A DNA stretch of 63,367 bases, counting the filler, from Octopus bimaculoides (lineage: Eukaryota), in assembly GCF_001194135.2 (NCBI RefSeq). It is 4 parts of 4 records of this genome, joined end to end, with 100 filler letters (N's around TTAATTAATTAA, not from the genome) between each part and the next. Parts side by side here need not be neighbours in the genome. Positions count along the whole stretch, not along the records: positions 27,683 to 55,488 come from NC_069006.1; 3 more parts are not named here. One strand, 5' to 3'. Each line of letters opens with the position of its first letter. The first letter of the stretch is position 1. Under the pieces are notes generated by a model. That model did not search any database. It was not told the DNA's origin and saw nothing but the letters and a program-made list of their open reading frames with translations. A program made the translations under genes and the position numbers. Positions 28,251 through 50,971 of the stretch are shown one piece after another.

Positions 28251-29893
28251 TTAGATCTCAGCTGCGGGTTTTGAGTCGGGAATGTGAGCTTGATGTGTGA
28301 TATAGTTAGCCATTTTGTGGCAGTCGGAGCCCATCATGTTGGGTGGCGCCGACAGATTGTTCCCCACATATCCGGTGACTGACGGGGGCGCCATCTGTGT
28401 CATACCATGGCTTGTGCTTGATCCTTGCGATGATGAACTGTTCGCCGACGACGGGTGACTCGCAACAGATCCGGCTGGTGAGACCTTCATCTGCTGGCCC
28501 CCGTACGTAGGCGGCGCCCTCTGTTGCTGCTGTTGCTGCTGCATCATCATGATCTGCTGTGTTGGCGTTGGAGTCAGTGGCATCTGGTTGGGCACGTAGC
28601 CGTGAGGGGGCATCATCTGATTGGCCATAGGCACTGGTGGGTTATTCCCCTGCTGCTGGTTTGGCTCAGAATTGTTGCTGGAGCTTGTTAGGCCAGTTGT
28701 GGCTGTGGTATTGCTTGGGCCCACGCTGCTCTGATGGCTGGGTTGGCTGTGGGAACTTTGGTGCGTGCTGCTTGAATGAGCTGACTGACTCTGTGATATA
28801 CTCCAGTGAGGGTTTTGGTTCATTGCTTCCATTTTTATGGCACGCAGACGAGCATTAATTTCTCTGAAAGATGGACGGCGAGATGGGAGTTCATGCCAAC
28901 ATTCTACTTTCAAGGCATAAATGTGTGCGTTGCAGTTTTCCGGACAACGTAGTATCTGTCGTGAGCGAATCATATCGATAACTTCCTGGTTCGAATATCC
29001 ATAGTAAGGCTGGAGGCCATAACTGAATATTTCCCACAGAACAACACCAAATGACCAAACATCACTCTCAGTCGTAAATTTTCCATAGAGGATTGATTCC
29101 GGAGGCATCCAGCGGACTGGAAGCAGAGATTTGCTCTGGACGCGGTAGTAATCAGATGAATAAATGTCTCGCGAAAGACCAAAGTCGGAGATCTTCACGG
29201 TGAGTGCATCTCCGACGAGGATATTTCTTGCTGCCAAATCTCGGTGAACAAAATGATGATTCGAAAGGTATTCCATTCCTGAAGCAATTTGGATTGCTAT
29301 GTGCAGCATGTCCAAGTAGTCTAAGACCCGGTTTCCTTCTTCATCAATTCCTGTTATGTCCGAATGCGGCGAATGCGTGATCAAATACTCATGCAGGTCT
29401 CCTTGACTCATGTATTCAAACAACATGCACATCGGCTCCTGTTTCATGCACACACCCAGCAGGCAGACTATGTTCGAGTGTCGCATCTCCGACATCAAAT
29501 CCACTTCTCTTCGGAAATCGTTTTGCACTTTTGGAGATGCGTTCTCTTTGAGAGTCTTTATCGCAACTTTTGTGACAGAGTTTTCACTGAACAATCCAAC
29601 CAGTTCGCCTTTATAAACTTTGCCAAATGCTCCTTCACCTAGTTCTTGGATGAAACGTATGTTTTGCATGAAAAATTCTCTGGTTCTCATGTTAGATTTT
29701 GCTGCCAAAGGGCTCAGTTCCATTGGTTGACCTTGACGCTGTGATGCCTTATCACTAGTTCCTTGGTATCGGTTGTGGGATCGCTGACAGAAGCATACCA
29801 GTGCTAACAGAAGAACGAGAGCTAAAGGTACAGTGATTCCTGGGACGAGGATGAACATCAGCTTGTTCACATCTTCAGTAATACCATGTGGGC
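28251..29893 (-). CDS. Ror: Ror terminal exon: juxtamembrane, TM, tyrosine kinase, S/P/Q-rich tail, stop
   Basis: TTGCAG acceptor, phase 1. [27 protein letters not shown]; [47 protein letters not shown]. Confidence 0.97.
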
Positions 29894-50671: not shown

Positions 50672-50971
50672 AACTTACATGATTGCTCCCTGCTCTCTGT
50701 AGGAACAAATATGCTCAGTTCTTTGCTGTTAGCTGCCAAGAAAGTTGGACCAATTTTCTGGGTCCACAAAATCATTAAGAAAAAAAAAAAAATGCTTAAA
50801 AACAAAATAATTTAGAATTCAGTTTTTCCTTACCTAATTGTGTACTGTTGGCAACATTGAAATTGTGCTTGTGTGGGGTTTGCAAGCTCCAGTTTTGACA
50901 GGGGTGCTTGGATTTTGTGAAATTGAAGTAACCTTTGTAGGTCATTCCAGTGCCTTTGTAACATGTTATAT
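28251..50971 (-). CDS. Ror: Ror-family receptor tyrosine kinase; Kringle-Ig-CRD-Kringle-Kringle-TM-TK (5'-incomplete gene model)
   Basis: join(complement 50971-50834, 47094-46990, [46075-46019], 44445-about 44270, 42912-42806, 42337-42302, 41742-41688, 41231-41113, 40342-40133, 38671-38576, 38185-38042, 37304-37200, 31377-31234, 30504-30400, 29893-28251). All visible junctions are AG/GT and phase-compatible; one donor lies in a gap. 10-Cys CRD, Ror-type kinase with YSSDYY, S/T- and P-rich tail. Confidence 0.9.
29990..30310 (-). mobile_element. Two adjacent partial copies of the piggyBac-like MITE
   Basis: Similar in reverse orientation to 61121-61341 and 35193-35380. Confidence 0.55.
30400..30504 (-). 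CDS. Ror: Ror kringle 3, second-half exon (105 nt)
   Basis: [34 protein letters not shown](C); CAG acceptor, GTAAGT donor, phase 1-1. Confidence 0.95.
31234..31377 (-). CDS. Ror: Ror kringle 3, first-half exon (144 nt)
   Basis: [47 protein letters not shown]; TAG acceptor, GTAAGT donor, phase 1-1. Confidence 0.95.
31610..31750 (+). mobile_element. Deu/Nin-domain SINE copy (family B)
   Basis: GGCAGAATTGTTAGCA..CCTTCGGGGTTGATAAAATAAGTACCAG. Confidence 0.7.
31775..31950 (-). mobile_element. SINE family D (RTE-like (GAT)n tail)
   Basis: Reverse complement of the 62685-62850 element; further copies near 36540-36830, 36980-37115, 44130-44250 and 47240-47300. Confidence 0.7.
33628..34280 (-). mobile_element. 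Family A SINE head and tail separated by (TA)n and a gap
   Basis: Head 34280-34120, microsatellite and gap, tail 33830-33640. Confidence 0.8.
35193..35380 (+). mobile_element. piggyBac-like MITE, partial copy
   Basis: TTAA-CCCTTTAG start; body similar to 61121-61341. Confidence 0.65.
35560..35885 (+). mobile_element. tRNA-derived SINE (family C), near full length
   Basis: TGGCTCAATGGTTAGAGCG A-box, GAGTTTGATTC B-box, TTGCTCCAGTCAACTCAGCTGTAGAAATGAG body. Other copies at 39150-39485(-), 43330-43510(-), 43785-44115(-), 51430-51600(-), 53110-53200(-). Confidence 0.85.
37200..37304 (-). CDS. Ror: Ror kringle 2, second-half exon (105 nt)
   Basis: [34 protein letters not shown]; TAG acceptor, GTAAG donor, phase 1-1. 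Confidence 0.95.
38042..38185 (-). CDS. Ror: Ror kringle 2, first-half exon (144 nt; alternative in-frame acceptor at 38179)
   Basis: [47 protein letters not shown]; GTAAGT donor. Confidence 0.93.
38576..38671 (-). CDS. Ror: Ror CRD third exon (96 nt), not in the ORF track
   Basis: [31 protein letters not shown] matches the Ror LPNCE..EAANCIRIG motif; CAG acceptor, GTACG donor, phase 1-1. Confidence 0.93.
39150..39485 (-). mobile_element. Family C SINE copy
   Basis: Reverse complement of 35560-35885. Confidence 0.8.
40133..40342 (-). CDS. Ror: Ror CRD second exon (210 nt)
   Basis: [69 protein letters not shown]; phase 1-1. Confidence 0.95.
40418..40790 (+). mobile_element. Family A SINE head directly followed by a family B SINE
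   Basis: Head 40418-40575; Deu/Nin-core copy 40585-40790. Confidence 0.8.
41113..41231 (-). CDS. Ror: Ror CRD first exon (119 nt)
   Basis: [39 protein letters not shown]; CCCCCAG acceptor, GTAAG donor, phase 2-1. Confidence 0.93.
41688..41742 (-). CDS. Ror: Ror Ig-CRD linker exon (55 nt)
   Basis: [17 protein letters not shown]; CACAG acceptor, GTAAGT donor, phase 1-2, which is required to join 42806/42302 to 41231. Confidence 0.9.
41845..42150 (+). mobile_element. 3' end of a Tc1/mariner-superfamily element with terminal CACCCTGTA
   Basis: [33 protein letters not shown], ending in CACCCTG-TA. Confidence 0.8.
42302..42337 (-). CDS. Ror: Ror 36-nt linker micro-exon
   Basis: TTTTACTTTCCAG acceptor, (E)[20 protein letters not shown] donor, phase 1-1. 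Confidence 0.75.
42560..42740 (-). mobile_element. Deu/Nin-domain SINE copy (family B)
   Basis: Core and tail present; further copies at 53395-53575(+), 56730-56940(+), 57175-57370(+), 61775-61915(-), 63270-63367(-). Confidence 0.75.
42806..42912 (-). CDS. Ror: Ror Ig domain second exon (107 nt)
   Basis: (R)[35 protein letters not shown]; phase 2-1. Confidence 0.95.
43785..44115 (-). mobile_element. Family C SINE copy
   Basis: Reverse complement of 35560-35885. Confidence 0.8.
44268..44445 (-). CDS. Ror: Ror Ig domain first exon; 3' end and donor fall in the N gap at 44268-44277
   Basis: (D)[55 protein letters not shown]; poly-T AACAG acceptor. Confidence 0.92.
45505..45750. repeat. Degenerate (GAT/GGT)n trinucleotide tract
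   Basis: Directly visible. Confidence 0.9.
46019..46075 (-). CDS. Ror: Candidate 57-nt kringle1-Ig linker exon
   Basis: CTACAG acceptor, (E)[25 protein letters not shown] donor, phase 1-1. Not required for frame. Confidence 0.5.
46990..47094 (-). CDS. Ror: Ror kringle 1, second-half exon (105 nt), not in the ORF track
   Basis: [34 protein letters not shown]; TTGCAG acceptor, GTAATG donor, phase 1-1. Confidence 0.92.
47318..47515 (+). mobile_element. Family A SINE tail
   Basis: CCTGGGGTCGATTTGCTTGACTAAAGGCGGTGCTCCAGCATGGCCGCAGTCAAATGACTGAAACAAGTAAAAGAG; other tails at 43570-43730(-), 51040-51240(-), 54725-54925(+). Confidence 0.85.
50834..50971 (-). CDS. Ror: Ror kringle 1, first-half exon (138 nt)
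   Basis: [45 protein letters not shown]; TACAG acceptor, GTAAGG donor, phase 1-1. Confidence 0.92.

What the first reader, a model, noticed from the sequence alone, without database searches (positions are those of the whole stretch)
28251..50971. Ror receptor with three kringles, one N-terminal to the Ig domain (K-Ig-CRD-K-K-TM-TK)
Canonical Ror ectodomains have Ig-CRD-one kringle (established). Here three complete 6-Cys kringles are seen: K1 (50971-50834 + 47094-46990) upstream of the Ig exons, and K2 and K3 between the CRD and TM. Splice phases allow one open frame from K1 to the stop, apart from one donor hidden in a gap. A kringle in front of the Ig domain would be a new ectodomain layout and could change Wnt, co-receptor or dimerisation contacts (inference). 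I cannot tell how widespread it is in molluscs.
Basis: partly seen in the sequence, partly recalled or inferred. Interest (0 to 1): 0.88.

Follow-up and report, generated by a model that had tools for sequence, protein, structure and literature searches.

The report
Ror receptor gene with three kringles
This is a mollusc-type Ror (Wnt co-receptor) tyrosine-kinase gene carrying three kringle modules instead of the usual one; two are firmly placed, but the one in front of the Ig domain cannot be shown here to be in the same mRNA.

Summary
The minus strand carries six kringle half-exons, which make three complete six-cysteine kringles. Each scores 80-88 bits against Pfam Kringle (cut-off 34). Their order is K1, Ig, linker, Fz-CRD, K2, K3, then one large exon with the transmembrane segment, an intact Ror-type kinase and a Ser/Gln/Pro-rich tail. 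All visible splice sites are GT-AG.

I corrected the model in one place. A 55-nt linker exon (41742-41688) lies between Ig and CRD, and it is conserved in a related genome.

K2 and K3 are well supported. CRD-K2 sits on one gap-free block and K3-TM-kinase on another.

K1 is clearly a translated, selected exon pair: identity to K2 is 70/68/40% by codon position. It is Ror-type and in phase with the Ig exon. However, each K1 exon lies on a short block between assembly gaps. No signal-peptide exon is visible, and I could reach no transcript or close-relative data.

None of 161 Ror homologues with CRD and kinase has more than one kringle. A limpet Ror locus and a bivalve stretch from the CRD exons to the last exon each hold one kringle exon pair.

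Verdict: a real lineage-specific variant of a known receptor, made by duplicating a phase 1-1 exon pair. Interest is moderate. The K-before-Ig layout remains unproven.

The parts
50834..50971 (-). K1a: first half of kringle 1 (138 nt, phase 1 to 1). Acceptor ttacAG, donor GTAAGG.
   Evidence: It lies on the short block 50346-52002 between N gaps.
46990..47094 (-). K1b: second half of kringle 1 (105 nt, phase 1 to 1). It ends TGT G | GTAATG.
   Evidence: It lies on the short block 46884-48299 between N gaps. K1 against K2 is 70/67.5/40% identical by codon position.
46019..46075 (-). Unverified candidate 57-nt phase 1-1 mini-exon ([19 protein letters not shown]) in the K1b-Ig1 intron.
   Evidence: it has an AG acceptor and a GTAAGA donor, but no homology or domain support. 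It is not included in my model.
44278..44445 (-). Ig1: first half of the I-set Ig domain. It enters in phase 1. Its 3' end and donor are hidden in the 10-N gap at 44268-44277.
   Evidence: The limpet Ig1 exon also starts in phase 1, two residues away.
42806..42912 (-). Ig2: second half of the Ig domain (107 nt, phase 2 to 1).
   Evidence: It is 69% identical at amino-acid level to the L004 exon, with the same phases.
41688..41742 (-). Linker exon, 55 nt, phase 1 to 2 ([19 protein letters not shown]).
   Evidence: Found by a phase-constrained scan. A 55-nt exon with the same phases is 76% identical at amino-acid level in L004.
41113..41231 (-). CRD1: start of the Fz-type cysteine-rich domain. 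Canonical CAG acceptor, phase 2 to 1.
   Evidence: L004 has the same phase-2 acceptor.
40133..40342 (-). CRD2: core of the Fz CRD (210 nt, phase 1 to 1).
   Evidence: It is 83% identical to P0232/L004.
38576..38671 (-). CRD3: end of the CRD (96 nt, phase 1 to 1).
38042..38179 (-). K2a: first half of kringle 2 (138 nt), the canonical kringle next to the CRD.
   Evidence: It is 77% identical to L004. CRD-K2 aligns in one stretch to ROR2 CRD-Kr 9FSE.
37200..37304 (-). K2b: second half of kringle 2 (105 nt). It ends TGC G | GTAAGA.
   Evidence: It is 91% identical to L004.
31234..31377 (-). K3a: first half of kringle 3 (144 nt, phase 1 to 1).
   Evidence: It is on the same gap-free block (27683-32561) as the TM/kinase exon.
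30400..30504 (-). K3b: second half of kringle 3 (105 nt). The donor lies inside the last Cys codon (AAA T|GT). The Cys is completed by the GC that opens the last exon.
28251..29893 (-). Last exon. It holds the short stalk, the transmembrane segment ([25 protein letters not shown]), the Ror-type tyrosine kinase ([27 protein letters not shown]), the Ser/Gln/Pro-rich tail and the TAA stop at 28253-28251.

Best explanation
The piece holds the 5'-incomplete body of one Ror-family receptor tyrosine kinase gene on the minus strand.

**Core structure.** The ancestral mollusc exon plan is Ig1, Ig2, linker, CRD1-3, Ka, Kb, then a TM-kinase exon. That plan is intact here. The two-exon kringle cassette (Ka+Kb, both introns phase 1) has been copied twice.
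- One copy lies in tandem between the original kringle and the TM exon (K3).
- One copy lies in the phase-1 intron in front of the Ig exon (K1).

**Predicted protein.** Because every junction is phase 1, all copies stay in frame. The predicted mature protein is K1-Ig-linker-CRD-K2-K3-TM-kinase-tail. About 1047 residues are visible, counting three residues (WGS) assumed for the gap.

**Kinase.** The kinase keeps all catalytic motifs, so the protein is probably an active RTK.

**Inferred function.**
- By analogy with ROR2, the CRD is the Wnt5-pathway signalling element.
- K2 forms a structural unit with the CRD and supports folding and secretion.
- K3 lengthens the stalk.
- K1, if included, adds a protein-protein interaction module at the N-terminal tip.

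**Status of each step.**
- Shown: the exons, phases, domains, selection on K1, the uniqueness among surveyed Rors, and the conserved exon plan.
- Inferred: that K1 is spliced to Ig1, that K3 is constitutive, and all functional roles.
For: **Exons, phases and splice sites.**

**Domains.** Pfam finds three kringles, I-set, Fz and a tyrosine kinase.

**Ror identity.** (9FSE, 252 bits, one stretch over CRD-K2).

**Contiguity.**
- K3a, K3b and the last exon are on one gap-free block with introns of 729 and 506 nt.
- Ig2 through K2b are on another gap-free block.

**K3 splicing.** The sixth Cys of K3 is encoded across the K3b/last-exon junction, T|GC.

**K1.**
- Its exons are the same lengths as K2's (138+105 nt).
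- It is 59% identical to K2 at DNA level, and identity by codon position is 70/67.5/40%. That pattern indicates long purifying selection on the protein.
- Its nearest kringles are mollusc Ror kringles (58% to Lottia), not plasminogen kringles (47% or less).
- It has two N-glycosylation sequons in or next to the kringle.

**Surroundings.** No other coding-like feature lies around K1. The introns hold only interspersed repeats and microsatellites.

**Landing site.** The limpet has the same phase-1 intron before Ig1. This is the kind of site that accepts a 1-1 module.

**Survey.** None of 161 Ror homologues has more than one kringle. The limpet locus (89 kb) holds one Ka/Kb pair, and so does a bivalve stretch from the CRD exons to the last exon.

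**Literature.** The roles of CRD and Kr are taken from PMC11219042. The canonical layout, including Lottia and Capitella, is taken from PMC2772990.
Against: - I have no transcript evidence for any junction.
- K1a and K1b each lie on a short block between N gaps (50346-52002 and 46884-48299). Their order and orientation therefore depend on scaffolding.
- No signal-peptide exon is visible upstream of K1a within the 4.5 kb available.
- Gaps in the K1b-Ig1 intron and the K2b-K3a intron could hide exons, including a first exon or a terminal exon.
- K2b can also splice in frame directly to the last exon (G|GC = Gly). An upstream exon ending in phase 1 could splice directly to Ig1. K1 and K3 could therefore be optional cassettes.
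- The one related genome I found (L004) ends 1.1 kb after K2b, and its sequence upstream of Ig2 was out of reach. Conservation of K1 and K3 is therefore untested.
Confidence: 0.55

Rival explanations
1. K1, and possibly K3, are alternatively spliced cassette exons. The main isoform would be the canonical Ig-CRD-one-kringle Ror, and the multi-kringle forms would be tissue- or stage-specific.
For: Every kringle exon pair is phase 1-1, so skipping keeps the frame. K2b spliced to the last exon gives ...[14 protein letters not shown]... in frame. Ig1 accepts any phase-1 upstream exon.
Against: K3's sixth cysteine is completed only through the junction with the last exon, and K3 sits within 1.5 kb of that exon behind short introns. 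That suggests regular use. K1 and K3 both show preserved protein sequence. Neither point excludes alternative use.
Confidence: 0.2
2. K1 belongs to a separate upstream transcript and is never joined to the Ig exon. Examples are a partial duplicate of the Ror gene or a small secreted kringle protein.
For: No upstream or downstream partner of K1 is proven. The reading frame runs on past the K1b donor into the gap at 46883. The gaps at 46817-46883 and 44888-45302 could hide a terminal exon.
Against: - K1b has a good donor (GTAATG), the same exon length as K2b and the same phase as the other kringle second-half exons.
- No stop codon, other domain or other coding-like sequence is visible between K1b and Ig1.
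- No further kringle or other exon is visible upstream.
- K1 is Ror-type in sequence.
Confidence: 0.13
3. The position of K1 is a scaffolding artefact. The two short K1 blocks really belong elsewhere, for example in the gapped K2b-K3a intron (which would give Ig-CRD-K-K-K) or at another locus.
For: Both K1 exons sit on 1.4-1.7 kb blocks bounded by N gaps and rich in interspersed repeats. The K2b-K3a intron has two gaps.
Against: Two independent blocks are placed in the correct mutual order and orientation for a functional Ka-Kb pair. They lie 3.7 kb apart, similar to other introns here.
Confidence: 0.08
4. K1 is a decaying, untranslated duplicate (a pseudo-exon pair).
For: Expression is not shown.
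Against: - The frame is open over 81 codons in AT-rich DNA.
- All six cysteines and the kringle motifs are kept, with 82 bits to Pfam.
- Both splice sites are intact.
- Third codon positions are near saturation (40% identity to K2) while first and second positions are 70% and 68% identical.
Confidence: 0.04

Closest known systems
Canonical Ror receptors (vertebrate ROR1/ROR2, C. elegans CAM-1, mollusc and annelid Ror)
   Same: - Ig, Fz-type CRD, a kringle packed next to the CRD, a single TM segment, a Ror-type kinase with YxxDYY, and a Ser/Thr/Pro-type tail.
- The exon plan matches the limpet and bivalve genes.
- CRD-K2 aligns over its full length to 9FSE.
   Different: - There are three kringles instead of one: an extra one between the canonical kringle and the TM segment, and one ahead of the Ig domain.
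- The Ig-CRD linker is very short (19 residues, against 60-90 in other molluscs).
- The kinase motifs are all intact, unlike human ROR1.
Nrk / MuSK branch of the Ror-related RTKs
   Same: A CRD plus a kringle in front of a related kinase. The Drosophila Nrk CRD-Kr structure 7ME4 also matches (100 bits).
   Different: The ATP-site motif is GEGAFG (Ror), not the GQGAFG reported for Nrk (PMC2772990). There is one Ig domain, not three or four. All the best hits are Ror.
Multi-kringle secreted proteins (plasminogen/angiostatin, HGF, apolipoprotein(a))
   Same: Tandem kringles with a short linker. K2-K3 aligns as a pair to plasminogen K1-K2 and to the HGF kringles. Both are thought to have grown by duplicating phase 1-1 kringle exons (established knowledge of exon shuffling).
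   Different: There is no PAN/apple or serine-protease domain. The kringles here are Ror-type (CRNPGN, not CRNPDG) and sit in a membrane RTK.

Membership tests
Ror-family receptor tyrosine kinase | Frizzled-type cysteine-rich domain in the ectodomain | tested here: met
   Pfam Fz scores 35.3 bits against a cut-off of 32.1. The region aligns to the ROR2 CRD-Kr structure 9FSE at 252 bits.
Ror-family receptor tyrosine kinase | A kringle immediately C-terminal to the CRD | tested here: met
   K2 follows CRD3. A single alignment stretch covers CRD plus K2 against 9FSE.
Ror-family receptor tyrosine kinase | Exactly one kringle (the layout described for all Rors, PMC2772990 and PMC11219042) | tested here: not met
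   Three kringles are encoded. None of 161 surveyed Rors has more than one.
Ror-family receptor tyrosine kinase | An Ig domain N-terminal to the CRD (present in most Rors, absent in some insects) | tested here: met
   Pfam I-set scores 63.8 bits.
Ror-family receptor tyrosine kinase | A single TM segment followed by a Ror-type tyrosine kinase (YxxDYY activation loop, nearest relatives Ror) | tested here: met
   PK_Tyr_Ser-Thr scores 328.6 bits. The top 120 hits that carry a name are Ror, with 71-77% identity to gastropod Rors. The motifs [21 protein letters not shown] and YSSDYY are present.
Ror-family receptor tyrosine kinase | A Ser/Thr- and Pro-rich C-terminal tail | tested here: met
   The 199 residues after the kinase are 17% Ser, 12.6% Gln, 11.6% Pro and 7% Thr.
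Ror-family receptor tyrosine kinase | A signal peptide, i.e. a type-I membrane protein with a complete N-terminus | tested here: inconclusive
   No credible signal-peptide exon lies within the piece. The 5' end lies outside it or in a gap.
Ror-family receptor tyrosine kinase | Acts in Wnt5-type non-canonical signalling | not testable with these tools
   This needs binding and signalling assays.
Nrk / MuSK | Nrk-type GQGAFG ATP site (PMC2772990), or the MuSK layout with several Ig domains | tested here: not met
   The motif is GEGAFG. There is one Ig domain. The best hits are Ror, not Nrk or MuSK.
Plasminogen / HGF / apolipoprotein(a) multi-kringle proteins | PAN/apple domain and/or trypsin-like protease domain together with kringles; secreted | tested here: not met
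   Pfam finds no PAN or trypsin domain in the gene model. The ORF listing of the rest of the piece shows no other coding-like sequence. A TM segment and a kinase are present.

The most novel reading that the evidence does not exclude
In this lineage the Ror receptor constitutively carries a kringle at its N-terminal tip, ahead of the Ig domain, plus a second stalk kringle. The resulting K-Ig-CRD-K-K ectodomain is found in no other Ror surveyed. It would offer new contact surfaces for ligands, co-receptors or dimer partners.
Probability: 0.5. Interest if true: 0.5.

Novelty: new variant of a known kind. Interest (0 to 1): 0.42.

Why it matters
Ror ectodomains are treated as a fixed Ig-CRD-kringle unit, and the role of the kringle is still debated. 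In ROR2 the CRD alone suffices for WNT5A signalling, while the kringle stabilises it (PMC11219042).

A natural Ror with extra kringles would be a ready-made experiment on what kringles contribute to this receptor. Possible roles are stalk length, oligomerisation and partner binding. This one has an extra kringle at the tip and another in the stalk, both long preserved by selection.

It is also a clean example of domain gain by duplication of a phase 1-1 exon pair into phase-1 introns.

It does not change how Ror signalling is understood, and it may already be visible in gene models of the same clade that I could not reach. Its importance is therefore moderate.

Tried and rejected
1. **Proteins of close relatives.** I ran three homologue searches: ectodomain, last exon and Ig1 exon. 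None returned a near-identical protein. The best was 77% in the kinase. The Ig1 search found no candidate at all.
2. **Representative search with the spliced Ig-CRD.** I re-ran it with the CRD2 exon. It gave one close relative, P0232 (83%).
3. **The relative's contig, L004.** It confirmed Ig2 through K2b and the linker exon. The contig ends 1.1 kb after K2b. Its sequence upstream of Ig2 could not be fetched. An attempt to look up one of its own ORFs failed on coordinates, and I did not pursue it.
4. **Exact look-up of the window's own ORFs.** They are not in the collection.
5. **JGI metagenome scans.** I tried K1+Ig1 and a degenerate K1b/Ig1 junction pattern. Neither found anything.
6. **Signal-peptide exon search** upstream of K1a, between K1a and K1b, and between K1b and Ig1. 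It returned only microsatellite or repeat-derived frames, which I rejected.
7. **My first CRD1 model.** It used an AAG acceptor at 41221 to keep phase 1. I rejected it in favour of the linker exon plus the CAG acceptor.
It is spliceable, but nothing supports it.
9. **Six-frame Pfam scan by DNA reference.** I replaced it with an ORF listing, which showed nothing but repeats.
10. **tRNA scan.** It found none.
11. **Literature searches** for multi-kringle Ror or cephalopod Ror. None turned up a report.
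Full report
**Material.** The usable piece is 27683-55488. It is 37% G+C and is broken by eight N gaps of 10 to 838 N. These gaps split it into nine blocks:
- 27683-32561
- 33178-33986
- 34091-44267
- 44278-44887
- 45303-46816
- 46884-48299
- 49138-50309
- 50346-52002
- 52088-55488

**Checking the observation.**
- Reading the DNA at each boundary gives GT-AG exons.
- K1a is 50971-50834 and K1b is 47094-46990. K2a is 38179-38042 and K2b is 37304-37200. K3a is 31377-31234 and K3b is 30504-30400.
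- All six exons enter and leave in phase 1.
- K1 and K2 have identical exon lengths (138+105 nt). K3 is 144+105 nt.
- Pfam, which is independent of this sequence, scores the three spliced kringles at 82.4, 87.5 and 80.3 bits against a cut-off of 34.3. On the whole model it finds Kringle three times, I-set, Fz and PK_Tyr_Ser-Thr.
- I built an HMM from the three kringles and ran it over all six frames of the piece. It finds exactly these six half-exons and nothing else.
- The kringles differ from one another at 41-47% of nucleotides, so they are not assembly duplicates.

**Gaps.** Only the 10-N gap at 44268-44277 touches coding sequence.
- The Ig1 exon (from 44445) runs into the gap after '...ACC TAC T'.
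- Other mollusc, annelid and nemertean Rors read W-G-S-R at this point.
- Ig2 (42912-42806) begins with the third base of an Arg codon. The same split is seen in the related locus L004.
- The frame closes if 10 (+3n) exon bases and the donor are hidden. This is an inference.
- All other gaps are intronic and could hide exons.

**Correction of the model.**
- With the canonical CAG acceptor, CRD1 starts at 41231 in phase 2, whereas Ig2 ends in phase 1.
- A phase-constrained scan of the intron found a 55-nt exon at 41742-41688. It has a pyrimidine-rich acceptor and a GTAAGT donor, and it encodes [19 protein letters not shown].
- The only close relative I could reach is an ENA contig found through the CRD2 exon. 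It has a 55-nt exon at the same place with the same phases, 76% identical at amino-acid level, and a phase-2 CRD1 acceptor.
- That locus also carries Ig2, CRD1-3, K2a and K2b at 69-91% amino-acid identity. This validates those exons.

The full model is K1a, K1b, Ig1, Ig2, linker, CRD1, CRD2, CRD3, K2a, K2b, K3a, K3b and a last exon at 29893-28251. About 1047 residues are visible.

**What the gene is.**
- Searches with the ectodomain and with the last exon return Ror1/Ror2/Ror-like proteins throughout. Identity to gastropod Rors is 71-77% over the kinase region.
- CRD plus K2 aligns as a single stretch to the human ROR2 CRD-Kr crystal structure 9FSE at 252 bits. It also matches the Drosophila Nrk CRD-Kr structure.
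- The kinase has [21 protein letters not shown] and YSSDYY. It therefore looks catalytically competent, and it has the Ror rather than the Nrk ATP-site motif (PMC2772990).
- A hydrophobic segment, [25 protein letters not shown], precedes the kinase.
- A 199-residue Ser/Gln/Pro-rich tail follows it.

**How unusual the kringle count is.**
- I counted kringles with the same HMM in all 231 proteins returned by the two searches. As a control, it finds five kringles in plasminogen.
- Of 161 proteins that have both a Ror CRD and the kinase, 157 have one kringle, four have none and none has two or more.
- The set includes gastropods, bivalves, chitons, annelids, a nemertean, arthropods, amphioxus and fishes.
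- The first search would have ranked a multi-kringle Ror at the top, because its query held three kringles.
- At genome level, a bivalve locus shows CRD2, CRD3, Ka, Kb and the last exon, with one kringle pair in that stretch.
- The 89-kb limpet (Patella caerulea) Ror locus shows one kringle pair and no kringle-like exon anywhere else. That includes the roughly 59 kb upstream of Ig1.
- The exon plan is the same in all three: the kringle is split at the same point and the introns are phase 1. The limpet intron before Ig1 is phase 1 as well.
- The literature describes Ror as (Ig)-CRD-one kringle, including Lottia and Capitella (PMC2772990; PMC11219042). My paper searches found no report of a multi-kringle Ror.

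**Origin.**
- Each of K1, K2 and K3 is closer to mollusc Ror kringles (58, 66 and 59% to Lottia) than to the other two (46-53%) or to plasminogen kringles.
- K2 is the most canonical and sits where the single kringle sits in other species.
- The simplest history is two old duplications of the Ka+Kb cassette. One was in tandem (K3). The other went into the phase-1 intron ahead of Ig1 (K1).

**How secure each kringle is.**
- *K2:* it is on the same gap-free block as Ig2, the linker and the CRD.
- *K3:* it is on the same gap-free block as the TM/kinase exon, behind introns of 729 and 506 nt. Its sixth cysteine is encoded across the junction with the last exon (AAA T | GC). K3 is very likely part of the Ror mRNA. 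However, K2b can also join the last exon in frame, so K3 could be optional.
- *K1, in favour:*
  - It has an open frame, six cysteines and intact splice sites.
  - Two N-glycosylation sequons lie in or next to it.
  - Identity to K2 is 70/67.5/40% by codon position, which shows selection on the protein.
  - It has the same strand and the right order, and its phase fits Ig1 (G|AT = Asp).
  - No other coding-like sequence is nearby.
- *K1, against:*
  - Each K1 exon is on a short block flanked by gaps and repeats.
  - The signal-peptide exon is not in the piece.
  - I have no transcript or close-relative evidence.

**Likely mechanism (inferred).** In ROR2 the CRD is necessary and sufficient for WNT5A signalling. 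The kringle forms a structural unit with the CRD and is needed for good secretion. Kringles generally act as protein-protein interfaces (PMC11219042). On that basis:
- K2 keeps the canonical supporting role.
- K3 extends the stalk between the CRD-K2 unit and the membrane.
- K1, if present, adds an interaction module at the tip.

**Verdict.** This is a real gene and a real, lineage-specific expansion of kringle exons in a Ror receptor.
- The claim of one open frame needs the extra linker exon.
- The headline claim (K before Ig in the same protein) is plausible, at about one in two, but not demonstrated.
- I could not test whether the layout is already annotated in the organism's own clade, because no close relative's proteins were retrievable.
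- I rate it a new variant of a known kind, of moderate interest.

Noticed in passing
window 43785-44129, 39152-39490, 35564-35882; 47313-47512, 33636-33861, 51038-51273, 52088-52243, 43578-43734; 51652-51829, 34091-34278, 44621-44802, 40417-40577: The introns hold at least three families of short interspersed repeats, about 330, 200 and 170 bp long and 70-93% identical, in both orientations. Several copies abut assembly gaps. ARAGORN finds no tRNA-like head.
   Followed up: partly
window, e.g. 55222-55469, 50346-50430, 45303-45600, 32209-32529: Long (TA)n/(CA)n-type compound microsatellites flank almost every N gap. They generate the many spurious '[18 protein letters not shown]' ORFs. They are the probable cause of the assembly breaks.
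   Followed up: no
L002 and L003 7253-8214, compared with L001 7739-7798: In a bivalve Ror gene, the first 60 nt of the second kringle exon (GNHNLCRNPNGSMQAPWCYT) is repeated every 82 bp in the intron just upstream of the real exon. L002 and L003 hold 12 copies and L001 holds 1. This is a length-polymorphic minisatellite that contains an exon fragment.
   Followed up: no
window 30398-30402 and 29892-29893: The K3b donor GT lies inside the kringle's last Cys codon (AAA T|GT). The Cys is re-created by the GC that opens the last exon. By contrast, K1b, K2b and the limpet and bivalve kringle exons all end with a complete Cys codon plus G.
   Followed up: partly
window 28251-29600 (last exon): All catalytic kinase motifs are intact ([21 protein letters not shown]). 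From memory, human ROR1 has several of these substituted. The tail contains a Met/Gln run ([13 protein letters not shown]).
   Followed up: partly
window 41688-41742 compared with other molluscs: The Ig-CRD linker is only 19 residues here and in relative L004. In gastropods, bivalves and chitons it is 60-90 acidic/Pro-rich residues.
   Followed up: partly
L005 210-314: A Logan genomic contig comes from an unidentified mollusc-like animal. Its last exon is 65% identical to the window's. Its kringle second-half exon is closer to K1b (66%) than to K2b (54%) or K3b (49%). That exon lies 490 nt upstream of the TM exon.
   Followed up: no
window 46019-46075: A spliceable 57-nt phase 1-1 open segment ([19 protein letters not shown]) lies in the K1b-Ig1 intron. 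It has no homology support. It could be a small linker exon or a chance match.
   Followed up: partly
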